Shown here: positions 43,916 through 60,626 of the stretch, one piece after another
Numbering within the stretch: the stretch's first letter is position 1
Layout of the letters: every line of letters starts with the position of its first letter
Virus record (IMG/VR): IMGVR_UViG_3300046653_000093
Span: 151,809 to 215,808 of that record
DNA: 64,000 nt
Strand: one strand, 5' to 3'
Translations under genes and position numbers: made by a program
The notes under the pieces: generated by a model
Seen by the model: only the letters and a program-made list of their open reading frames with translations
Told to the model about the DNA's origin: nothing
The model's database searches: none

Positions 43916-44695
43916 CTAAACCCCTGACGCTCTTTTTTGAGTCTCATCTGCTAGGGATACCGGCTTATTGCCCTTTTTGATATTGGCAATCGTTTCAAGC
44001 GGGCGAAGATTCTCTAGAGCCCATAGCTTTTGAAAGTTCTCGCAATCAAGTGAATCAAAGGTAAGTTTGCTTTTAGGGATTATATGATCTATCTGCCAGG
44101 TAAGTTTGCTTTTATCATAAACGCCATAATTATCCCAATTCATCCATGTCTCCCACAAAGATTCGATGTGAGATTTCAATTCCGCTGCAGTATACGGTAA
44201 TCGTTTGAATATTTCTTTTTCAAGACTTTTGCTAACATGAAATGGTTTAGTGGCCAGAATAGATCTTCTTATATAGGCCGACACATTCATACTCAATCTA
44301 TAAACAGGCTCAAGCCTTCGTTTGGAATAATACACCTTATGTGATTTCTTGATTACATCAGCATTATTAATAACCCAATTCTTGTAACTTTCTCCTTGAC
44401 AAATTTTACACCAGCTATAAACTCCAAGATTTGAACAGTTGGTTTTATGATATTGATCAATTGTTTTATATTGATTGCAATTGCTGCAAATTTTTCCATC
44501 AAGCTTTGGCTTTGCTCTCTTTTTTAGAGTTTGGTAATGCTGTTTTTGTTTGATTAAGATGATACTTCTATTCTCGGCATGATACTGATTATGGCATATT
44601 TTACATTGAGCCGACATACCATCAGACATAGACTTGTTTTTGTAAAATTCGCTTAAAGACTTAACCTCCTTGCATTTACAGCATTTCTTATCCAT
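43916..44695 (-). CDS. Free-standing HNH homing endonuclease
   Basis: Two CxxC..CKxC zinc modules; IESLWETWMNWDNYG..WQIDHIIP..LENLRPL; start refined to MDKKCC. Confidence 0.8.
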   Translation of the reverse strand: MDKKCCKCKEVKSLSEFYKNKSMSDGMSAQCKICHNQYHAENRSIILIKQKQHYQTLKKRAKPKLDGKICSNCNQYKTIDQYHKTNCSNLGVYSWCKICQGESYKNWVINNADVIKKSHKVYYSKRRLEPVYRLSMNVSAYIRRSILATKPFHVSKSLEKEIFKRLPYTAAELKSHIESLWETWMNWDNYGVYDKSKLTWQIDHIIPKSKLTFDSLDCENFQKLWALENLRPLETIANIKKGNKPVSLADETQKRASGV

Positions 44696-44702
44696 AAACA
44701 CT

Positions 44703-45398
44703 CTATAACCAAACGAATTCCAAAGTGCCAAAGGCAGCCGTTGGTGGCCCGGTCACCATCGCTACTCCAGGATAATCTTCATTTGGTTGTGATGTGGTTA
44801 ATTTTCCATTTTCAGATACAAATAATATAGAATTCAATGGATAACGCTGATTTGTCTCATACATATCGCATTGGAAAATTCCTCGTTGGAACCATACAGT
44901 AACATGGCCACTTCCAAGCGTAGAGTCATCACCAGATACGTTTGGAATTTGATATGTGTAGCTAACAATGGTACGAATCGAATCCGGAATACCATCTCCA
45001 TCAAAATCGAAGTTGAGCACTGTTCCGGCCGGGAATAGAACAACACCATTGCGGGCAATAAGTGCTACATCGACTGGTGATGTAATAAAGCTAGACGGAA
45101 TGATGTTTGGATTGCGAAGTTCCCATTTCAAATCAACCGTAGTAACTAATTGGCCACCCTCTTCAACTGCTGACAAAACCGGAACAATTACTTCTTCATC
45201 AATTGATGGGGCTGTAAAGGCTCTGGTTTTGAAATCATCAATAATACCAAATGGCGCTCTGCCATCACTTACACCACAGACTAAGTTATTTCCACGTAAA
45301 TAAAGCTGGGCAATCATTCCTGGTTCAAACTCAGCTACTGGATCAACTGGATATGATACTGGTATAGCATTTCCTATTTGTACAATCTTTAAACTCAT
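44703..45398 (-). CDS. Capsid decoration/cement-like protein
   Basis: Strong RBS (AAGGAGAGG); DDSTLGSGHVTVW..LFVSENGKLTT. Confidence 0.55.
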   Translation of the reverse strand: MSLKIVQIGNAIPVSYPVDPVAEFEPGMIAQLYLRGNNLVCGVSDGRAPFGIIDDFKTRAFTAPSIDEEVIVPVLSAVEEGGQLVTTVDLKWELRNPNIIPSSFITSPVDVALIARNGVVLFPAGTVLNFDFDGDGIPDSIRTIVSYTYQIPNVSGDDSTLGSGHVTVWFQRGIFQCDMYETNQRYPLNSILFVSENGKLTTSQPNEDYPGVAMVTGPPTAAFGTLEFVWL

Positions 45399-46496: not shown

Positions 46497-46708
46497 ATTG
46501 ATACCTCTATAGTACTTTCATCAATAGTTTGTGCTCTTTTGATAATTGCGTCAACAGCAGCACATTGAAGTGTCATACCGGCATTTTCAAGCAAGTTACG
46601 AGCTTTAAGAAGAGAGGATATGGCCTCATCTGCTCCGAGAGATTTCTTAAGATCTCTACTGAGAAAAAAGGCCATATCTTGTTCTATTTTTGTGGTGAAA
46701 TTTTTCAT
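46493..46708 (-). CDS. Hypothetical protein
   Basis: 71 aa, AAGG RBS; shares a helical motif with neighbours. Confidence 0.55.
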   Translation of the reverse strand: MKNFTTKIEQDMAFFLSRDLKKSLGADEAISSLLKARNLLENAGMTLQCAAVDAIIKRAQTIDESTIEVSI

Positions 46709-46715
46709 GTTACCT

Positions 46716-47006
46716 TTATGGGGTCCTTACACCAAGTGATTCCAGAAGTGATACCATAGATGCCTTCTTCTTTTTCTTATCTTTATCAGAAATATCAATA
46801 CTTGGATACTTACTATGTACGGCCCTCTTTACGGCACTTTGTAGTTCTTTCAACGAACCACTCCACCATGGCGGGGCTGACGTATATTGGTGAGATCTGG
46901 CAAGAGCATTTCGAGCACGGCCAATAGTATCAATAGGAAAGTGATCTTTATCATCCTTTACTTTTGGATGCTTATCACCAAATATGGCAGCCGGCTTATT
47001 ACGCAC
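46716..47006 (-). CDS. Basic protein domain (FPIDT..RARNALAR), possibly a -1 frameshift extension of the upstream Lys-rich protein
   Basis: Frame is open upstream of the GTG back to the slippery T TTT TTA at 47045-47051. Confidence 0.55.
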   Translation of the reverse strand: MRNKPAAIFGDKHPKVKDDKDHFPIDTIGRARNALARSHQYTSAPPWWSGSLKELQSAVKRAVHSKYPSIDISDKDKKKKKASMVSLLESLGVRTP

Positions 47007-47038
47007 CTTAGCTTTTGGATCTTTATCTCCAGCTGCCT

Positions 47039-48061
47039 TTATGCTAAAAAACCTTTAGCCAACTCCTCTGCTAACTTCTGTAAAGATGTTTTCTTGCTCG
47101 CAACACTACGAGTCAATTCATCAAGATTAGGCTCTTCTGCCTCTGCATTGCCATCCTCTCCGATACCCTCAACCAATGATTCAATATCTGGATCATCAAG
47201 ATCAAGCTCACCTTCACTAGCACCTTCAGCTTCAGCAGGCTGATCAAGAATAGACCAATCACCTTCGCCCTCAGCAGGCTCTTCAAGTTCTTGCATCAAT
47301 TTCTCGAACTCTTTGTTGTCATCTGAATCTTCGGCCATACCCATATCGCCGCAATCAGCATCGCCGCAATCAATAACTTCGGAGGCATCATCGGACGCTT
47401 TTTTGGTAGTCTTCTTTTTGTCGTCCTTCTTGTCGTCTTTGCCCTTTGGCTTGGCCTTATCGTCTTTCTTGTCGTCCTTCTTCTTCAACCAAGGAGGTAG
47501 CCCTTTGGCATCATTCTTGTCGCCTTTTTTAGCATCTTCCTTTTTCTTGGCATCTTCCTTCTTTTTTTCGGCGGCCTTCTTCTCTTCTTCCTTCTTCTTG
47601 GCTGCGGCTTCTTCCTTCTTGTCTTTGCCCTTGCCTTTTTCTTCCTTCTTCTTGGCAGCGGTTTTTACAAGGTTATCAAGAGCTAACAATGTGAGAGCTG
47701 ATGCCTTAGAGAGTCCTGCCTCGTCCAAAATTTCGGAAGCGTTGCACAAACTCTTAATACAAGATTCGTACTTGGTCATAGCCTTCTTTTTTGCAGCTTT
47801 GGCCTTAGCCTTCTCTTTCTCGGCCTTCTCCTTTGCCTTCTCTTTTTCAGCTTTGGCCTTGGCCTTTTCCTTGTCAGCCTTTGCCTTCTCTTTTTCAGCT
47901 TCGGCCTTAGCCTTCGCCTTTTCTTTGGCAGCCTTTTCCTTATCGTCTTCTTTCTTTGCAGCCATCTTTGTGAATTGTGGTTCTGCCTTTGTGAAAATAG
48001 ACTGATATACTGGGCTGGCCATAATACCATTCATCTCTGTAGCAATATCAAATTTAGACAT
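47039..48061 (-). CDS. Lys/Ala/Glu-rich low-complexity protein (histone-like, putative DNA-condensing) with acidic tail
   Basis: KEKAKAKAE repeats, KKEDAKK, acidic C-terminus; start refined to MSKFDIA (GAGG RBS). Confidence 0.6.
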   Translation of the reverse strand: MSKFDIATEMNGIMASPVYQSIFTKAEPQFTKMAAKKEDDKEKAAKEKAKAKAEAEKEKAKADKEKAKAKAEKEKAKEKAEKEKAKAKAAKKKAMTKYESCIKSLCNASEILDEAGLSKASALTLLALDNLVKTAAKKKEEKGKGKDKKEEAAAKKKEEEKKAAEKKKEDAKKKEDAKKGDKNDAKGLPPWLKKKDDKKDDKAKPKGKDDKKDDKKKTTKKASDDASEVIDCGDADCGDMGMAEDSDDNKEFEKLMQELEEPAEGEGDWSILDQPAEAEGASEGELDLDDPDIESLVEGIGEDGNAEAEEPNLDELTRSVASKKTSLQKLAEELAKGFLA

Positions 48062-48079
48062 ATTTACCTCATTATGGAT

Positions 48080-48102
48080 GGGCGGGGCCTTCAACCCCGC
48101 CC
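48080..48102. promoter_or_regulatory. GC-rich intergenic stem-loop
   Basis: gggcgggg-ccttcaa-ccccgccc; no U-tract on the coding strand. Confidence 0.5.
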
Positions 48103-48113
48103 GGCCCAGAAAA

Positions 48114-51100
48114 TTAGAACTTCAAACCTTTTGACTCAAAGTAGTTATCAAAGAAACTCTTGATATCTTGCTCGCCTTCTTGTGCAACCTTGGCCATTGG
48201 TAGAATTACTTCGCCTGAACTTAGAAGACCAACCATAGGAATGGAAGCCTGCTTGTTCATAGATGGTTGTCGTGCCAAAATATTCTTGATGCTCTCAAAT
48301 CCCGCGTCATTCCACTTCATAATGTCGTTGACTTGTGAATCAAGCTGACCCTCAGTAATCATGCCTTTAGCAATCATTTGATGGGCAACTTCATAAGCTC
48401 TCTTGATACGTCCCTTGTAAGACTCAACTTCCTCAGCTTGCTTGGCTTTGGCATGTTCCTGTGTCAACTTGGTTGCGAAATCTTTACTTTCTGTATCGCC
48501 CTGACCAAACAGTTCCTTCCAATATTTAACTGCTTCCGCGTCAACACCATGGGAAACCAACTTATCAACATCATCAGCCTTCATCTTGCCTTCTGCAACT
48601 AGAGCCTGAATCATCTCAGCTTGCTTACGTACACGAGGTGGCATATTGGCCAACTCAAGCATGTAGCTTTGAATATCCTTTGGCACATGGAATTCAGCAC
48701 CTGGAACATTTGGCTTTACATCCAAGTTACCGGCGTCAACTGCACTAACACTGCCACCTGGATGCGCATCGTTAGACAATTCATTAAACCCAAGCAAGCC
48801 CTTTTCAGCTAGCTTTATACGTGCCTGGGCACGCCCTTCTTTAGTTGATAGTTCCAAAGTTCCTCCTGCTGTTACTGTTACCTCTCCTAGTTGCTGAGTT
48901 GTTCCATCTGGAGTCTTCAACGACAACTTGGCATCTGCCTTATCCGAAGCTCCCTTGCCCTTGATGTTAGCTAACCAGCTATCGAATGTACCTCCGTCTT
49001 CCGCCGCACCTTCATCAGCACATGGCAATTCACCAGTTGCTGCGTCTGCAGACTCTTCTTCAGCTCCATCCTTTGCATCGGCGCATTCTTCATCTTCTGC
49101 TCCGTCTTTTGCATCAGCGGCATCAGCACATTCCTCGGTTCCGTCAGCTGCATCTGCAGTCTCTTCGGTTTCTTCTTCCGAAGCGAAAATTGCGTCAAGA
49201 AGATCTTTTTCTGGATCTTTCTGTGAAGCGCGCTTCTCCAACTCAGCAGTTCCGTAAGCATACTTAACAACAGCCTCCATCAACTTACCAGCATCAACCA
49301 ACATGGCCTTTGCATCTTTGACTGCCGAAATTGTTAGTGCGTTCAGATATTCACGCTGCTCTTCGGTCATAGAAGCATAAGTTTCCTTATAGACCCTCTT
49401 TGCTGTGTTGATTTCACGCATGTGCTTCGCCAAAGAAGTAATCGTCTCATCGACGCCCTCTTGCAACATACCATTCACGCGCTTACGCATTGACTGAAGT
49501 TGAGACGCGGTCTTTGGCCCTTCCGAGAACTCTGCATCACCTGCAGGCTCAACGTCTGGCATAGCATCTGCATCTTCAGAAACAGCACCACTGACCTTGT
49601 CACGAAGATCACTAAGTTTGCCACCCATCTCATCAAACAAAGACTGAAGGTCATCGACGATTTCATCAGTATTCCCGCCCTTTCCGCCAACATTCTTTGG
49701 TGGCTCAAGTGGAGGAAGATCTGCGCCGCCTGCAGCACCATCGACTGGAGGAGCTGGAGGAGCAGCTGGAGCTGCTTGTGCGTTCTTTAATAGAGCGTCT
49801 GCTGTAGCCTGAAAGCCCTCGGTCTGAATGCGATTCAGCAATGACTTACCAAAACGCTCAGTAGCAACGGCGTCATAAAGAGACTCTGAATTACCCTTGG
49901 TAATTTGATCAACAGAGGCGCGAAGAATTGCTTTATCATTAGCATAAACGACCCAGCTCGAAGCTGACTTATTGACACGGCCATCAGGAAGAGCAACCTT
50001 CTCAAAACGAGCCTTCACCAACGAAGCACGAAGCAACTTCTCCTTCTCTTTCTCGTCGTCATCATAAAGACCTTCGACATCGCCAACGCCTGGGAATGGT
50101 TTTTCACCAACCATTTGCTTATCAAGCATACGGTCTTTCTCATTCAAAGGATCCTTTGAATATTGAACTTTACCTGGCTTTGGCTCTTCTGTGCCTAGGT
50201 AATATCCCTTGCTCTGCAGTTGTTCCTTTGCCTTCTTAAGAGCGGCTTCGCGGAACAATGCGCGCTCGTGCTCATCAGCTAAACGCTGAAGTTCTTTCTT
50301 TACCTTCTCGTCACCTGGGTACATACCCTCTTCGTCACCTGTGTTTGGGAAAGGAGCCGGACCATGTAAATTCTTGTCCATCAATCTCGCCTTCTCATTC
50401 AAAGGATCCTTTGAATATTGAGCCTGTCCCGGCTTTGGTTCTTCTGTACCTTGAAAATATGCATTCTTCTTTGTCATGGTTGGTTCCTCATTATTAGATA
50501 CTACTCTAAGTAAATTCTCCTGTAGGCTAGCCAGTTTCGTCTGCGCTCCCAAAATTGCTCTCTGTAACTCTGAGGCGTAAGTTGGGAAAGCCTCAGGCGG
50601 ATTTATCTGAGTCGATGGTTCTGCACCAGATTCTTCCATCGACCAGCTAGAGCGAGTTGGGCCAACCGCATCGCTCTCATCACTTTCATCAAAGTCATTG
50701 GCCATAGATTCGATCTTGCCCATCAGACTTTGAAGGTCTTTCTGAATAGATGTCAAATCTTGCCTAGACAAACCTTTCTTTACTTCCAAATAATCTGAAA
50801 GTAACCCGGCAGCCTTAGCAATATCACTGGCAATAATATGCTTAACCTTGGCTTTTGGGTCTGCTCCGGAAACAACTAATGACAGTTCAATCGGAGTCAA
50901 ATCTAGGTTGATTTCACCGTAGCAGCTCTTGTTCTTCATATGTTGGCAGAAATCTTTTTCAGTTCTGGCGACTCTGTGGCAGTCGGAACATACAGCTCGC
51001 CCTACGGCTGTACCCATCGAAACATTGTTGGCAACCCCTGTCTTAACCTTATCGGCCAAGTCACCATAATTTTTCGCATCAAGAGCACAAAGAGCAATTA

Positions 51101-51575
51101 CTCTCTTTCTACGGTCATCATATACGGTGTCAACAATAACGCCTCGAATCTTATCAACCGACTGTGATTGATGATCGAGGCATAATGGACGACCGACCCA
51201 ATTTTTATATGCTACTTTCAACTCTGCTTCTGGAAAGATGTCTCGGTTATTATTCCGATAAGGCATAAGGGTTTTTTCATTACAAACCCACTTTACACCG
51301 CCTTCCTTAGTAGATTCCCAAGCAGCTTCGACATCTTTTCCTTGTGATGTCTTCTTTGGGGTTCCATCATCATTAATGCAAGCTGCCTCAGCGGCATGCA
51401 TCATCACGCAAGTAAAATATAAGAAGTCTTTTGCTTTTGGAGCGATAACCTTCAACTCTTGAGCAAACTTGTACATGCGGTTTTCAATATCCAAATCCAT
51501 ATCATCTGCCAATTTCTCAATTGGCTTGATATCCTCTGGTCTGATGAAAACCGATTCTCCTAGTTTAATAAGCAT
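48114..51575 (-). CDS. Prohead protease fused to long scaffold/internal region
   Basis: N-terminal protease-like block NNNRDIF..GRPLCLDH..RGVIVD..VSMGT..CSDC..CQHM..IELSLVVSGADPKA, followed by coiled-coil, acidic and repeat regions; 1153 aa. Confidence 0.75.
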   Translation of the reverse strand: MLIKLGESVFIRPEDIKPIEKLADDMDLDIENRMYKFAQELKVIAPKAKDFLYFTCVMMHAAEAACINDDGTPKKTSQGKDVEAAWESTKEGGVKWVCNEKTLMPYRNNNRDIFPEAELKVAYKNWVGRPLCLDHQSQSVDKIRGVIVDTVYDDRRKRVIALCALDAKNYGDLADKVKTGVANNVSMGTAVGRAVCSDCHRVARTEKDFCQHMKNKSCYGEINLDLTPIELSLVVSGADPKAKVKHIIASDIAKAAGLLSDYLEVKKGLSRQDLTSIQKDLQSLMGKIESMANDFDESDESDAVGPTRSSWSMEESGAEPSTQINPPEAFPTYASELQRAILGAQTKLASLQENLLRVVSNNEEPTMTKKNAYFQGTEEPKPGQAQYSKDPLNEKARLMDKNLHGPAPFPNTGDEEGMYPGDEKVKKELQRLADEHERALFREAALKKAKEQLQSKGYYLGTEEPKPGKVQYSKDPLNEKDRMLDKQMVGEKPFPGVGDVEGLYDDDEKEKEKLLRASLVKARFEKVALPDGRVNKSASSWVVYANDKAILRASVDQITKGNSESLYDAVATERFGKSLLNRIQTEGFQATADALLKNAQAAPAAPPAPPVDGAAGGADLPPLEPPKNVGGKGGNTDEIVDDLQSLFDEMGGKLSDLRDKVSGAVSEDADAMPDVEPAGDAEFSEGPKTASQLQSMRKRVNGMLQEGVDETITSLAKHMREINTAKRVYKETYASMTEEQREYLNALTISAVKDAKAMLVDAGKLMEAVVKYAYGTAELEKRASQKDPEKDLLDAIFASEEETEETADAADGTEECADAADAKDGAEDEECADAKDGAEEESADAATGELPCADEGAAEDGGTFDSWLANIKGKGASDKADAKLSLKTPDGTTQQLGEVTVTAGGTLELSTKEGRAQARIKLAEKGLLGFNELSNDAHPGGSVSAVDAGNLDVKPNVPGAEFHVPKDIQSYMLELANMPPRVRKQAEMIQALVAEGKMKADDVDKLVSHGVDAEAVKYWKELFGQGDTESKDFATKLTQEHAKAKQAEEVESYKGRIKRAYEVAHQMIAKGMITEGQLDSQVNDIMKWNDAGFESIKNILARQPSMNKQASIPMVGLLSSGEVILPMAKVAQEGEQDIKSFFDNYFESKGLKF

Positions 51576-56817: not shown

Positions 56818-58728
56818 TTATCCTGGAGGAGCTGGTGGTTTCGGTGCTCCACCGCCGCCTCCGCCAATCGGAGATGGTGGTGGTGATCCAGACATTGGAC
56901 CAGGTCCGGGAGGTGCTCCTAATCCCCCACCTAATCCACCTGGTGCCGCTCCTCCACCTGGTGGAGTTATGAATGGACTTTCTCCTGGTACTGGTTGATC
57001 AATCTGAGTCACCTCATCAATCTCATCGCCAGGTCCAAGAGCCCTTAGCTCATGAAGATCATATTGTGCTAGAGAGGCTAGTTCTTTGATTCGAATTGCA
57101 TCTTGAATATCTTCGTAGCGAATCTTTCTCTGCTCTTCTTCGTATTCAAGACCAAGGCTTCTATATAGCGTTTGCAATGAAGCGCGCTTAGCCACACCTT
57201 CGCCGGTTGTAAGCTGAACCATCTGATTGATGTAACTATCCATATCAAACAATGACATGTGATTCCAATCAATCTCTGGAACAATAAGAGTCTTCTCTCC
57301 GTCAATTAGGTCATAAAAGTCCTGGATTTGTGCAATTGGAGCGAAGATTTTTCTCTTCAACCAACTAGACATCATTTGACGGAATTGCATGTATCTCTGT
57401 CGCAACACATCCAAAGCAACAGATCCTGTTGCATAAGTGGTATCACTGCCATCCATAATAACCGATGGAACCATCAAGCCAATATAGATCTCTTTGATAA
57501 GCTGAGTCACGTCAGCCGAAGTATCATAAATACCCTGGCCATATCCAATACGATCAACGGTTACGGCATCATGGGTGAAAATCTTGAAGTCCCTATCGTA
57601 TTGAGCTTGCTCGAATACGTGTCTCCAGTTCTCAAGATCAACTGGGCTTGGACGGAATTCCTGGTTTCCAATCTTAACCAATGTCAATGGATTGACCATG
57701 TTATCTGCTTGTGCATACTTAGATTCGCGCAATTTGTCCCACAACATAAGAGCTCGGAAACACGAAACAATAAGGCCCGTTCCACGAATTTCGTATGGGG
57801 AAATTCTTCTAGCCATATGATGCACATAGAAGTTGTTTAGGGGGATTTGCTCATTCTTTCGTACATGCTCAATGATCGAAGGGTCCAGCTGCTTGCGCTG
57901 TTGTAGATCTGATGGTTGATTACCAAAAACTACTCGTCTAAGATTCTCATCTGGGCGCATACTAATGATTGGCTCTGCCGCAATTACGCTACGCTGTACG
58001 TTGACATAATCCGGATTGAGAATCATCAGGCGGCTCCAACTTCCCTTGCTCTCGTCTAACTCGCAATAAGTAAAGGCCTCACCAAGAATCCAAAATTCTT
58101 GGGCTGCCATACAGGCAATATTCATTAGATCAATTTCCTCCGACATTTGGGAGAAGAACTTCTCTACCTTCGGATTCTTTGATTTGATATTCAACTTAGC
58201 AATTGGATAAGTTGAGTGTAATGTAATTGCATTATGAACAATTGGATTCAATGCAAAAAAGCTGCGGCTCCAAGCATTGATAGTTGGACGGTCTCTTGGT
58301 AAGTTGAGGTTCGAGTTCAACCATAGAGGAGAGTAGACTTCGGGAACTTGCCTTACAGAATCGTTAGAGCCACGCCAGCCCCCACCAGCAGAAGAGGCAA
58401 CATTGCCGACCCCACTGGCCATTTTATACATACCCTTGCCATTGTGAGTAACTACACCTAAACTAGTTTGAGCATTCCGAACTTCGCTGCGGCCACTCCT
58501 AGAAGATGAGAAACCAGACCCTTGCTCTCTCAGCTCTCCAGCATCAATCTGCATTTCCATAATATCTCGGCGTTGATCACTAACGCCACGAGCCATTCGA
58601 TTGGAAACCTCAGGAATACTAGAGAGAGCTATATTTTTGGCCATTAAGCTTTCAGAACGAGAAGCTATCTTAGCATTCCTTTCAATAAGGTCTTGCGCAC
58701 GTGTTTTGGTATTATTAATATCCATCAT
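56818..58728 (-). CDS. Portal protein
   Basis: Follows terminase; NPIVHNAITLH, EFWILGEAF, ILNPDYV, PYEIRGTGLIVSCFRAL, IYIGLMVP; Gly/Pro-rich tail. Confidence 0.8.
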   Translation of the reverse strand: MMDINNTKTRAQDLIERNAKIASRSESLMAKNIALSSIPEVSNRMARGVSDQRRDIMEMQIDAGELREQGSGFSSSRSGRSEVRNAQTSLGVVTHNGKGMYKMASGVGNVASSAGGGWRGSNDSVRQVPEVYSPLWLNSNLNLPRDRPTINAWSRSFFALNPIVHNAITLHSTYPIAKLNIKSKNPKVEKFFSQMSEEIDLMNIACMAAQEFWILGEAFTYCELDESKGSWSRLMILNPDYVNVQRSVIAAEPIISMRPDENLRRVVFGNQPSDLQQRKQLDPSIIEHVRKNEQIPLNNFYVHHMARRISPYEIRGTGLIVSCFRALMLWDKLRESKYAQADNMVNPLTLVKIGNQEFRPSPVDLENWRHVFEQAQYDRDFKIFTHDAVTVDRIGYGQGIYDTSADVTQLIKEIYIGLMVPSVIMDGSDTTYATGSVALDVLRQRYMQFRQMMSSWLKRKIFAPIAQIQDFYDLIDGEKTLIVPEIDWNHMSLFDMDSYINQMVQLTTGEGVAKRASLQTLYRSLGLEYEEEQRKIRYEDIQDAIRIKELASLAQYDLHELRALGPGDEIDEVTQIDQPVPGESPFITPPGGGAAPGGLGGGLGAPPGPGPMSGSPPPSPIGGGGGGAPKPPAPPG

Positions 58729-58757: not shown

Positions 58758-60626
58758 TTATCCACGGCCACCAAACATCTTAGGAATATACCCAACAACT
58801 GCCTGGATTGGACGTGCGCTTGTAGCTAGTTCGTATTTCATATATTGTGGATTGCTAATCGTGAATCCCTGGGTTACATCGAATTTCCAAGCCAAATAGG
58901 CATTCAATAGCGCCATCAAACCGTCGTTAGCTACAGACCCTTTTACATACTTTTTTAAAGGCTCCCCTGACTTATCCCTAGTAACTTTAATCTCCATACT
59001 TGCGCAATGTTCGATTAGCCATTCGATTCGGTCTAAGCTCCCACCTGGAAACTTGATACGGCCTTCTTTCAAAAGCCCAAGCAACTCTGAAATATAATAG
59101 TCTTTTTCGAATACAACTGTCTTTGGCCACTCATCATTTGAATATTTTATGCGTCCATTTACCTTATGCGAAGAACGAGATGCCAAAAACTTCTCATCAT
59201 AAATTAGTTGCAATTTATGTGTCAAGTCATATGCATCACCAATGTCGCCGATGGATAATGTCATATTGTAGCGCCTAAACATTTCCTCAACTGTATTCAT
59301 CTTCGTCTCTGGATCTGGTCTAAGCAACCGAGTGGCAAATTCAACATTGAATACATTTCCAGAGGCAGTTAAAATAACAGCACAACTATAGGAACCTTTA
59401 CGTCCTCGCCCAGACATCTGTTCAAGCGCTCCTCTCTGGCCCCAGTCGAATCCTGCATAAACTCGACGACCTTCATCAGGATAAATATACTTGACCATCT
59501 TGCGACCCTTATCGATGCACTTATCGCGAATCTCTTGGGACGTAATTGTTCCGCCTTCGCCGTCGTAGAATTCACCAAGAACTTCGTTCATGTAAACGCG
59601 CTCGGTATTAATTGGACTACGCTCTGGCTTTGCTTTCTCTATGGTCTCTTTGGTAAAATTTGGAATGTATAATTGATTGATGTGATAGCCAACAAAATCA
59701 CACTTCTCAGGATCGTTGATTGGAATCCATCGGCCACGTTCCTGAGCTTCAAGCTTATCTTGTTCGCAATGACACTCAGTACATCGAACAATCAAGCCAT
59801 AGAGCCATACCTCTTCCCAGTTCACACCAGGATGATATAGAGGAAAATATTTTCCACATCTTTCACAGCGCAAATGAAAGTAATTCTGTGAAGAATTCTG
59901 CCACATATTCCAATAAGATCCGCCTTTGGTCTTGGGCGTTCCATAATATACTTGAACACCTTCACCAGCCATTCCGTATCTGGATTGCGCTAGAATCTTT
60001 GTAGCTGCACCGATAGCAGCGTCGGACATGTCTTGTACCTCATCAAAGAAAGTACCATCACAAGTACGACCACGAATTCTATCGCCGTCGATACCGGTCG
60101 ATTCAATCCAAATCTGATTTCCAAACATGAATTTTTTGAAATGCATGTTGTTATTAGTCGGACTAGACAAATCCAAACGCGCTTCCATGTATGACTTCAG
60201 AATGCCATTGCTCTTCATCATTCCTGGAACTGGAGCCGCGTGACCAATGATTGGATCAAGTTTATCTTTTGTATACGCTGCCGCTAAAGATAACGTCGGG
60301 AACAAATGCATCATGCGCATTGGTGGACGTTCGTTAGTACCAAACAATCCACAGGCACTGAAGTAACACTCAAGAGCTGCCGCCATCGTCGTCGCCCCCA
60401 CCTGCCGTCCTTTCACAAGAACAATGGGTTTTGAGTTTGGCTCAATAGCTTTGAGTGCTATGTATCTGTAAATGTCGGCGAATGGCTTATAGCCAGTACC
60501 TTCTAATTGTAACGGCTTACCATCAACAGTTAAATATTTTGCACAAAAATATACCGGATCAAGACTTAGAATTCCGTCACGAAGTTTATAAAATAACTCA
60601 TTAAATCCTATTTCTGCAGATTTCAT
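58758..60626 (-). CDS. Terminase large subunit (lambda GpA-like with Zn finger)
   Basis: Walker A VLVKGRQVGATT, RIRG, Walker B FFDEVQD, YGTPK, CERC/CTEC, nuclease AGFDWG. Confidence 0.9.
   Translation of the reverse strand: MKSAEIGFNELFYKLRDGILSLDPVYFCAKYLTVDGKPLQLEGTGYKPFADIYRYIALKAIEPNSKPIVLVKGRQVGATTMAAALECYFSACGLFGTNERPPMRMMHLFPTLSLAAAYTKDKLDPIIGHAAPVPGMMKSNGILKSYMEARLDLSSPTNNNMHFKKFMFGNQIWIESTGIDGDRIRGRTCDGTFFDEVQDMSDAAIGAATKILAQSRYGMAGEGVQVYYGTPKTKGGSYWNMWQNSSQNYFHLRCERCGKYFPLYHPGVNWEEVWLYGLIVRCTECHCEQDKLEAQERGRWIPINDPEKCDFVGYHINQLYIPNFTKETIEKAKPERSPINTERVYMNEVLGEFYDGEGGTITSQEIRDKCIDKGRKMVKYIYPDEGRRVYAGFDWGQRGALEQMSGRGRKGSYSCAVILTASGNVFNVEFATRLLRPDPETKMNTVEEMFRRYNMTLSIGDIGDAYDLTHKLQLIYDEKFLASRSSHKVNGRIKYSNDEWPKTVVFEKDYYISELLGLLKEGRIKFPGGSLDRIEWLIEHCASMEIKVTRDKSGEPLKKYVKGSVANDGLMALLNAYLAWKFDVTQGFTISNPQYMKYELATSARPIQAVVGYIPKMFGGRG

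What the first reader, a model, noticed from the sequence alone, without database searches (positions are those of the whole stretch)
46716..47056. Candidate -1 ribosomal frameshift (U UUU UUA) extending the Lys-rich protein
Seen: the 47039 gene ends GGT TTT TTA GCA TAA, containing the canonical X XXY YYZ heptamer T TTT TTA (47045-47051). The -1 frame has a stop just before the heptamer and then runs open (..SIKAAGDKDPKAKVRNKPAAIF..) through the whole 46716 ORF, whose GTG lacks a well-spaced RBS. Inference: two isoforms of a DNA-condensing protein, the longer with a basic FPIDT..RARNALAR domain. Programmed frameshifts are well known for tail chaperones and some capsid or tail proteins, less so for such a protein.
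Basis: partly seen in the sequence, partly recalled or inferred. Interest (0 to 1): 0.6.

Follow-up and report, generated by a model that had tools for sequence, protein, structure and literature searches.

The report
Conserved -1 frameshift in phage head gene
A head-assembly gene of a huge peat-soil phage is split into two overlapping reading frames, most likely joined by a programmed -1 ribosomal slip, a known trick found here in a new gene family and backed by strong comparative evidence.

Summary
The 340-aa ORF (ATG 48061, stop 47041-47039, minus strand) ends GGT TTT TTA GCA TAA. The -1 frame has a TAA just before the heptamer T TTT TTA (47051-47045), then stays open for 109 more codons.

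The frameshift reading is strongly supported:
- Thirteen distinct related sequences keep the same -1 split. Ten use T TTT TTA and three use C CCT TTY.
- Many relatives encode both parts as one in-frame ORF.
- The window's GTG (47006) is ATT, GTA or GTT in relatives. The 13 codons before it evolve as coding sequence.
- The downstream domain is under strong purifying selection (dN/dS 0.05-0.19).
- A relative that lost the domain also lost the slippery run.
- An independent DNA run and an RNA-library contig both show six T.

A 9-bp stem starts 7 nt after the heptamer and is conserved, but its covariation is not significant.

The "DNA-condensing" idea is not supported. The short product is acidic (pI 5.4), largely disordered, and lies in the head module next to a protease-scaffold gene. 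The extension is a divergent DUF6582-like domain that other phages fuse to head proteases.

This is a new member of a known kind. No protein-level evidence exists.

The parts
47039..48061 (-). 0-frame ORF for the short isoform (340 aa, 37 kDa, pI 5.4). It has a conserved N-terminal motif (MSKFDIA..MNGIM), a charged K/E helix, a helical hairpin (residues about 97-142), an acidic disordered region and a SLQKLAEEL motif. Stop TAA is at 47041-47039.
   Evidence: Start ATG 48061 chosen from homolog N-termini and GAGGT at 48070-48066.
47063..47068 (-). SD-like GAGGAG 11 nt upstream of the heptamer. It is a possible dnaX-type upstream stimulator.
   Evidence: a GAGG(A/T)G-like element lies 6-12 nt upstream of the heptamer in 12 of 14 related sites and is absent in L021 and L022. 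Its function is inferred only.
47055..47057 (-). TAA that closes the -1 frame just upstream of the slippery site.
47045..47051 (-). Slippery heptamer T TTT TTA (X XXY YYZ in the 0 frame).
   Evidence: It is invariant in 10 distinct split relatives although the preceding codon varies (GGT/AGT/GAT, always ending in T). It is replaced by C CCT TTT or C CCT TTC in L088, L090 and L092. It has decayed to A ATT TTG in L091, which lacks the -1 ORF.
47029..47037 (-). 5' arm (GGCAGCUGG) of the predicted stem, starting 7 nt after the heptamer.
   Evidence: same stem from MFE and RNAalifold; covariation not significant.
46986..46994 (-). 3' arm (CCGGCUGCC) of the predicted stem.
46716..47045 (-). -1 frame extension: 109 codons from AGC at 47045-43, with the stop at 46718-16. 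Joined to residues 1-339 it gives a predicted 448-aa, 49-kDa long isoform with junction ...AKGFL|SIKAAGDK...
47004..47006 (-). GTG that gene callers use as the start of a separate 96-aa ORF. It is probably an internal Val codon.
   Evidence: it is ATT in L018, GTA in L021 and GTT in L084. No ORF is called at all in L092. The 13 codons upstream are conserved as coding sequence.
46785..46994 (-). Core of the C-terminal domain (KDHFPIDT..RARNALAR..APPWW.GSL.EL..AV), a divergent DUF6582-like fold of short strands plus helices.
   Evidence: pLDDT above 90 over residues about 21-90; DUF6582 link; no solved-structure match.

Best explanation
One head-morphogenesis gene of a huge phage is encoded in two overlapping frames. 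Ribosomes translating the 0 frame mostly stop at TAA 47041-39 and make a 340-aa acidic, largely disordered, scaffold-like protein. A fraction slip back one base on U UUU UUA (47051-45), with tRNA-Phe and tRNA-Leu re-pairing to UUU UUU. A hairpin 7 nt downstream and perhaps an SD-like GAGGAG 11 nt upstream probably help. Those ribosomes continue in the -1 frame for 109 codons and make a 448-aa isoform with a basic DUF6582-like C-terminal domain. The slip efficiency would set the ratio of the two forms. Shown here: the sequence anatomy; conservation of the heptamer and the -1 relation; in-frame homologs; purifying selection on the -1 ORF, including the stretch before the GTG; and that the split is not a sequencing error. 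Inferred: that the shift is ribosomal, its efficiency, the role of the stem and the SD-like element, and that the C-domain is a procapsid or protease-associated docking module.
For: 1) Anatomy confirmed. 2) Ten distinct sequences share the split with T TTT TTA: the window, L017, L018, L019, L020, L021, L022, L084, L085 and L089. The codon before the heptamer varies in amino acid (Gly/Ser/Asp) but always ends in T, and the 0-frame stop follows 1-3 codons later. 3) Three further lineages use a different canonical heptamer at the same junction, always -1: C CCT TTT TGA in L088, and C CCT TTC TAA in L090 and L092. 4) Single in-frame ORFs join the same two parts in L023, L024, L025, L032, L045, L047, L052 and in proteins P0082-P0097. 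5) The GTG is ATT, GTA or GTT in L018, L021 and L084. The 13 codons between the heptamer and the GTG vary 4/5/10 by codon position and carry in-frame indels of 12 and 3 nt. 6) The C-domain has dN/dS 0.05-0.19 at dS 0.7-1.8 between split lineages. 7) L091 has lost the C-domain, and its run has become GGA ATT TTG. 8) The same cassette (AGT TTT TTA GTG TAA) sits at another module boundary in L047 and opens a 95-codon -1 ORF homologous to a separate gene in L024. 9) Six T are seen in independent DNA run X5 and in an RNA-library contig spanning the junction. 10) A 9-bp stem 7 nt downstream is predicted by MFE in most relatives and by RNAalifold, with two compensatory pairs.
Against: There is no protein or reporter evidence. 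In E. coli, U UUU UUA is much less shift-prone than A AAA AAG (PMC5009743), and the U_UUA tetramer is only 1.8-3.6 times above background (PMC4066793). The host here is unknown. Stem covariation is not significant (32 of 500 shuffles reach the observed pairing; covariation term about 0). Both arms encode Ala-Ala and Pro-Ala-Ala, so the pairing could come from coding alone, and L084 lacks the stem. The runs were laid as contigs, which cannot exclude a minority of U7 transcripts. The C-domain tree is unresolved, so the ten T TTT TTA cases may stem from one ancestor.
Confidence: 0.8

Rival explanations
1. Transcriptional slippage: RNA polymerase adds one extra U on the T6 run, making an mRNA in which the two ORFs are in frame. 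The ribosome does not shift.
For: The site is a homopolymer run. One added U restores the frame exactly as a -1 ribosomal shift would. The runs were laid as contigs, which drop rare variants.
Against: Six U is short for efficient polymerase slippage (general knowledge; review PMC5009743). Three lineages use C CCU UUY, with runs of only 3-5 identical bases, which fit tandem tRNA re-pairing but not polymerase stuttering. The base before the run is constrained to T as the X of X XXY YYZ. The only RNA-library contig across the site has T6.
Confidence: 0.07
2. Two separate genes: the downstream ORF starts independently at GTG 47006 and the slippery run is incidental.
For: GTG is present in the window and in most close relatives, and gene callers annotate a 90-98 aa protein there.
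Against: There is no spaced SD: AAGG abuts the GTG, while real starts have GAGGT 4-7 nt upstream. The GTG is ATT, GTA or GTT in L018, L021 and L084, and L092 has no called start. The 13 codons upstream are conserved as protein, with in-frame indels. In-frame fusions occur in many relatives. The heptamer is invariant.
Confidence: 0.05
3. Artefact or dead gene: a homopolymer sequencing or assembly error, or a recent inactivating indel with the C-domain decaying.
For: A T run sits next to a frame change, which is the classic error signature.
Against: The sequence is identical in an independent DNA run and on a second, 392-kb contig. Compared with in-frame L024, the one-base difference lies after the T run, not in it. 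Thirteen distinct lineages share the split. dN/dS is 0.05-0.19 at saturated dS.
Confidence: 0.02

Closest known systems
C-terminally extended head proteins made by -1 frameshifting: T7/T3 gene 10A/10B and Lactobacillus phage A2 major head protein (cited in PMC5009743 and PMC5221750)
   Same: An X XXY YYZ heptamer sits a few codons before the stop of a head-module gene. A minority product carries an extra C-terminal domain read in the -1 frame. A structure downstream is proposed as a stimulator.
   Different: Here the gene is not the major capsid protein. It is a disordered, scaffold-like protein next to the protease-scaffold gene. The extension is a DUF6582-like domain, not an Ig-like domain. 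The phage is a huge one of at least 392 kb, and the family shows in-frame, split and domain-less states.
dnaX tau/gamma of E. coli (heptamer plus upstream SD plus downstream hairpin; other bacteria use other means or none), as reviewed in PMC5009743
   Same: The signal has three possible parts: an SD-like GAGGAG 11 nt upstream, a heptamer, and a stem 7 nt downstream. Homologs in other lineages reach the same two-product or one-product outcome in different ways.
   Different: In dnaX the shift makes the short product, whereas here it makes the long one. In-frame relatives L023 and L024 keep the heptamer and stem and would be dnaX-like if they shift, but this is untested. The heptamer is U UUU UUA, not A AAA AAG.
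CsoS2A/CsoS2B carboxysome scaffold (PRF in about half of species; PMC5009743)
   Same: A long, disordered, repetitive scaffold protein of an icosahedral shell is made as two isoforms differing by a C-terminal module. Frameshifting is used in only part of the family.
   Different: The sequences and the host system are unrelated. In CsoS2 the shift truncates the protein. A shell-binding role for the C-terminal module is only an analogy here.
Tail assembly chaperone G/GT-type frameshift of dsDNA phages (Xu, Hendrix & Duda 2004, cited in PMC5221750)
   Same: It is a conserved -1 shift joining two overlapping ORFs of a morphogenetic, non-enzymatic protein. It is recognised by conservation of the frame arrangement rather than of the sequence.
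   Different: The position is wrong. This gene lies in the head module (terminase, portal, protease-scaffold upstream), not between the major tail protein and the tape measure. No sequence similarity was found.
Pfam PF20223 (DUF6582)
   Same: 24 of 52 relatives of the C-domain match at E<=1, best 5.7e-5. Atlas feature and shape searches point to DUF6582 clusters.
   Different: The window's own domain gives no Pfam hit even at E<=10. TM scores are only 0.41-0.45. The family has no known function.

Membership tests
Programmed -1 ribosomal frameshift site (tandem-slippage type) | X XXY YYZ heptamer in the 0 frame | tested here: met
   T TTT TTA at 47051-45 in register. Related sites carry T TTT TTA, C CCT TTT or C CCT TTC, all in register.
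Programmed -1 ribosomal frameshift site (tandem-slippage type) | Overlapping -1 ORF open from the heptamer, with a 0-frame stop soon after | tested here: met
   The -1 frame is open 47054-46719. The 0-frame stop is one codon after the heptamer.
Programmed -1 ribosomal frameshift site (tandem-slippage type) | Heptamer and frame relation conserved across diverged homologs; downstream frame under purifying selection | tested here: met
   13 distinct split sequences. dN/dS is 0.05-0.19 at dS 0.7-1.8. The heptamer is invariant while flanking codons change.
Programmed -1 ribosomal frameshift site (tandem-slippage type) | Stimulatory RNA structure 5-9 nt downstream | tested here: inconclusive
   A 9-bp stem lies 7 nt downstream (MFE -23.8 kcal/mol, z -1.8 to -2.5). 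RNAalifold gives the same stem with 2 compensatory pairs. Shuffle tests are not significant, and the stem is absent in L084.
Programmed -1 ribosomal frameshift site (tandem-slippage type) | Trans-frame protein product detected, and shift abolished by heptamer mutation | not testable with these tools
   This needs mass spectrometry or a reporter assay.
Tail assembly chaperone (G/GT-like) frameshift | Gene pair located between the major tail protein and the tape measure protein | tested here: not met
   The gene follows terminase (58758-60626), portal (56818-58728) and protease-scaffold (48114-51575). Synteny is with head genes in relatives too.
Pfam DUF6582 (PF20223) | Match to the family HMM at or above its gathering score | tested here: inconclusive
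   The window's domain has no hit at E<=10. 24 of 52 relatives hit at E<=1, best 5.7e-5. Atlas leads are at score 0.90 and TM 0.41-0.45.
Phage scaffolding / internal head-assembly protein | Encoded in the head module beside the protease; helical or disordered, highly charged | tested here: met
   (context). (mean pLDDT 56, helices plus long disordered acidic region). (charge).
Phage scaffolding / internal head-assembly protein | Present in procapsids and removed or cleaved on maturation; required for head assembly | not testable with these tools
   This needs an isolate, virion and procapsid proteomics, or genetics.
   The short isoform has pI 5.4 and 85 D+E against 79 K+R. There are no Pfam or PHROG hits and no structural match for the C-domain.

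The most novel reading that the evidence does not exclude
In this family of huge-phage head proteins, a portable -1 frameshift cassette (NNU UUU UUA NNN stop, or C CCU UUY stop, plus a stem) acts as a stoichiometry valve at module boundaries. It gates a DUF6582-like domain in the window. It gates a different acidic module in L047 and L093. In the in-frame relatives that keep the heptamer and stem (L023, L024), it would work in reverse, truncating the protein as in dnaX. On this reading every lineage makes both a short and a long isoform, and the DUF6582-like domain is the part that anchors the scaffold to the protease, portal or shell.
Probability: 0.3. Interest if true: 0.7.

Novelty: new member of a known kind. 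Interest (0 to 1): 0.55.

Why it matters
Gene callers split this gene in two, or miss the second half altogether, as in L092. A whole family of huge-phage head proteins is therefore mis-annotated in public catalogues. Recognising the frameshift gives the correct long product. It links the uncharacterised DUF6582-like domain to head assembly. It also offers a natural series of states (in-frame, -1 split with two kinds of heptamer, domain lost, and the cassette moved to another boundary) for studying how programmed frameshifts arise and are kept. It would be a phage case of a frameshift in a scaffold-like head protein rather than in a capsid or tail protein. The mechanism itself is textbook.

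Tried and rejected
- DNA similarity to deposited phage genomes found no match.
- Pfam and PHROGs on the K-rich protein, the extension and the small downstream ORFs found nothing.
- A PDB sequence search with the domain profile found nothing.
- Foldseek against PDB and BFVD, and VIA-align wide, gave no meaningful match for the C-domain (best Z 4.0).
- The short isoform was folded. Confidence was too low (pLDDT 56) to justify a fold search, so none was run.
- A tree of the C-domain, meant to count origins of the split state, was unresolved: 15 of 22 branches were open. One origin versus several is left open.
- Covariation tests of the stem were not significant.
- The tail-chaperone interpretation was rejected on gene context.
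- The sequencing-error and GTG-start readings were rejected (see rivals).
- A search of the 215.8-kb record for a second copy of the domain found only this one.
- The promoter and terminator scan showed nothing above shuffle expectation between the two frames.
- The joined long isoform was not sent to the folding or search tools, because a -1 junction cannot be given by reference. In-frame homologs and the two parts were used instead.
- The large profile search and complex prediction were not used.

Full report
**Context.** The window is the last 64 kb of a 215.8-kb IMG/VR virus record estimated to be about 50% complete. A 392-kb contig carries the identical locus, so this is a huge phage. Runs holding the sequence come from peat, permafrost and lake metagenomes. 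All genes in the window lie on the minus strand. Upstream of the finding are a large terminase (58758-60626), a portal (56818-58728) and a 1153-aa protein whose residues 108-216 match head-maturation protease families (48114-51575). The finding therefore sits in the head-morphogenesis module.

**Observation.** Reading the minus strand, the upstream ORF ends GGT TTT TTA GCA TAA. The heptamer T TTT TTA is at 47051-47045 and the stop at 47041-39. The -1 frame has TAA at 47057-55 and is then open to 46719.
- Homolog N-termini and a GAGGT site place the real start at ATG 48061. The 0-frame product is then 340 aa, and the trans-frame product is 339 + 109 = 448 aa.
- The GTG at 47006 has AAGG directly abutting it, whereas neighbouring genes have GAGGT 4-7 nt before the start.
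- Among 54 ORFs and 19,691 codons of the window, in-frame X XXY YYZ heptamers occur at 0.0037 per codon. This is the only one within ten codons of a stop.

**Not an error.** An independent peat DNA run has a contig over 46925-47532 with no difference. A permafrost RNA-library contig covers 46875-47122 with six T and spans the junction. These are contigs, so minority variants cannot be excluded.

**Comparative evidence.** Searches of viral and metagenome contigs with the -1 ORF, and look-ups of proteins from the word search, gave four kinds of relative.
- **Same -1 split with T TTT TTA.** Ten distinct sequences share it: the window, L017, L018, L019, L020, L021, L022, L084, L085 and L089. The codon before TTT TTA is GGT, AGT or GAT, so the amino acid changes but the last base is always T. 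The codons after the heptamer vary, and the 0-frame stop follows one to three codons later.
- **Same -1 split with another canonical heptamer.** Three lineages have it at the same junction: C CCT TTT TGA in L088, and C CCT TTC TAA in L090 and L092. In L092 no gene was called over the downstream domain.
- **Single in-frame ORFs joining both parts.** These are L023, L024, L025, L032, L045, L047 and L052, plus proteins P0082-P0097. Compared with L024, the window's one-base difference lies just after the T run, not inside it.
- **Domain lost.** L091 lacks the downstream domain altogether. There the run has become GGA ATT TTG, and the next gene starts 12 nt after the stop. This is a natural control for the constraint on the heptamer.

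**Coding evidence for the -1 frame.**
- The window's GTG is ATT in L018, GTA in L021 and GTT in L084.
- The 13 codons between the heptamer and that position vary at 4, 5 and 10 sites by codon position. They carry in-frame insertions of 12 nt (L019) and 3 nt (L084).
- Over the domain, pairwise dN/dS between split lineages is 0.05-0.19 with dS of 0.7-1.8.
- The downstream frame is therefore translated, from the heptamer onward, in lineages that have no start codon for it.

**Stimulators.**
- A 9-bp stem (GGCAGCUGG / CCGGCUGCC; 47037-29 with 46994-86) starts 7 nt after the heptamer. Its MFE is -23.8 kcal/mol, with z -1.8 by the tool and -2.5 in my own shuffles.
- The same stem is the MFE solution in most relatives and the RNAalifold consensus of 14 sequences. 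Two pairs show compensatory change: G-C to A-U in L022, and A-U to G-C in L088 and L024.
- The shuffle controls are not significant and the covariation term is about zero. The arms encode Ala-Ala and Pro-Ala-Ala, so coding alone might explain the pairing. L084 lacks the stem.
- An SD-like GAGG(A/T)G lies 6-12 nt upstream of the heptamer in 12 of 14 sites, as in dnaX, but it also encodes conserved Glu-Glu.
- Both elements are plausible and neither is proven.

**What the protein is.**
- The short isoform has no family match. It has 85 acidic and 79 basic residues and a pI of 5.4. It is predicted with low confidence as a few helices plus long disordered acidic stretches. This is scaffold-like, not a basic DNA binder.
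- The extension folds confidently, with pLDDT above 90 over residues 21-90. It has no solved or viral structural neighbour.
- 24 of 52 relatives of the extension weakly match Pfam DUF6582, and Atlas searches point the same way.
- The domain is widespread in large phage contigs. It occurs standalone or fused to other proteins, including Mu-like head-maturation proteases in L064 and L070.
- I infer a head-assembly docking role. This is not shown.
- Only one copy of the domain exists in the 215.8-kb record.

**A further point.** In L047 the first junction is in frame and has no heptamer. The fused ORF nevertheless ends AGT TTT TTA GTG TAA, and the -1 frame runs on for 95 codons. That -1 ORF is 37% identical to the separate gene that follows in L024. 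L093 has the same cassette before a different acidic -1 ORF. L084 has a similar module fused in frame. The cassette thus recurs at different module boundaries of this family, which argues that it is functional in these phages.

**Rivals.**
- **Transcriptional slippage** fits the T6 run. It does not fit the C CCU UUY sites or the constraint on the base before the run.
- **Independent initiation at GTG** fails on start-codon loss, upstream coding conservation and the in-frame homologs.
- **Error or pseudogene** fails on the independent runs, the thirteen lineages and the dN/dS values.

**Weaknesses of the main reading.** There is no protein evidence. U UUU UUA is known to be weak in E. coli (PMC5009743, PMC4066793). 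The host is unknown. The C-domain tree is unresolved, so the ten T TTT TTA cases may descend from one ancestor. The shared ..LLESLG tail suggests as much.

**Verdict.** This is a well-supported programmed -1 frameshift of the classic kind in a new gene family, a scaffold-like head protein of huge phages. It is comparable in logic to T7 10A/10B, phage A2 gp5, dnaX and CsoS2. It is a new member of a known kind. Interest is moderate, raised by the unusually complete natural series of states and by the systematic mis-annotation it explains.

Noticed in passing
L047:2786-3075 (same contig as L010); L093:2064-2348; L024:2797-3030: The same cassette (NNT TTT TTA NNN TAA, with the -1 frame reading FFSV...) sits at other module boundaries of this family. 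In L047 it follows the in-frame C-domain and opens a 95-codon -1 ORF that is 37% identical to the separate 77-aa gene after the fused gene in L024. In L093 it opens a 93-codon acidic -1 ORF.
   Followed up: partly
L091:2140-2215: This relative lacks the C-terminal domain entirely. Its ORF ends GGA ATT TTG GCG TCG AAG TAA, so the slippery run has decayed, and the conserved 71-aa gene starts 12 nt later.
   Followed up: yes
L023:2500-2572 and L024:2500-2572: These in-frame relatives keep a slippery heptamer (T TTT TTT, T TTT TTA) and the downstream stem. A -1 slip there would hit a stop after 6 or 2 codons and give a truncated isoform, as in dnaX. This is untested.
   Followed up: partly
window 48114-51575 (-): A 1153-aa protein has a head-maturation protease match only at residues 108-216. 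The rest is a long acidic, low-complexity tail, so this looks like a giant protease-scaffold fusion.
   Followed up: partly
L084:2483-3001 (same contig as L011): The -1 ORF does not stop after the ..LLEVLG tail. It continues in frame to 172 codons, into a sequence resembling the separate small acidic gene of other relatives.
   Followed up: no
L064:1430-3457, L070:1676-3484: The DUF6582-like domain, preceded by a degenerate second copy, is fused N-terminally to a Mu-like prophage I head protease (PF10123).
   Followed up: partly
protein P0134: A split-type N-part homolog ending ..SKSFLT sits on a 463-kb contig labelled by NCBI as 'Candidatus Pacearchaeota archaeon'. This is probably a huge-phage contig binned into an archaeal MAG.
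   Followed up: no
window 43916-44731 (-) and 44703-45398 (-): An endonuclease VII / HNH-like protein is encoded within the head-gene block, and its start overlaps the end of the preceding 231-aa ORF by 29 nt.
   Followed up: no
window 46500-48200; runs X7 and X11: Contigs from peat and permafrost metatranscriptome libraries match parts of this locus at 99-100% identity. The phage or its transcripts are therefore present in RNA libraries. DNA carry-over is not excluded.
   Followed up: partly
window 14765 region (-): This is the only other in-frame T TTT TTA in the window's long ORFs. It lies mid-gene and is not near a stop.
   Followed up: no
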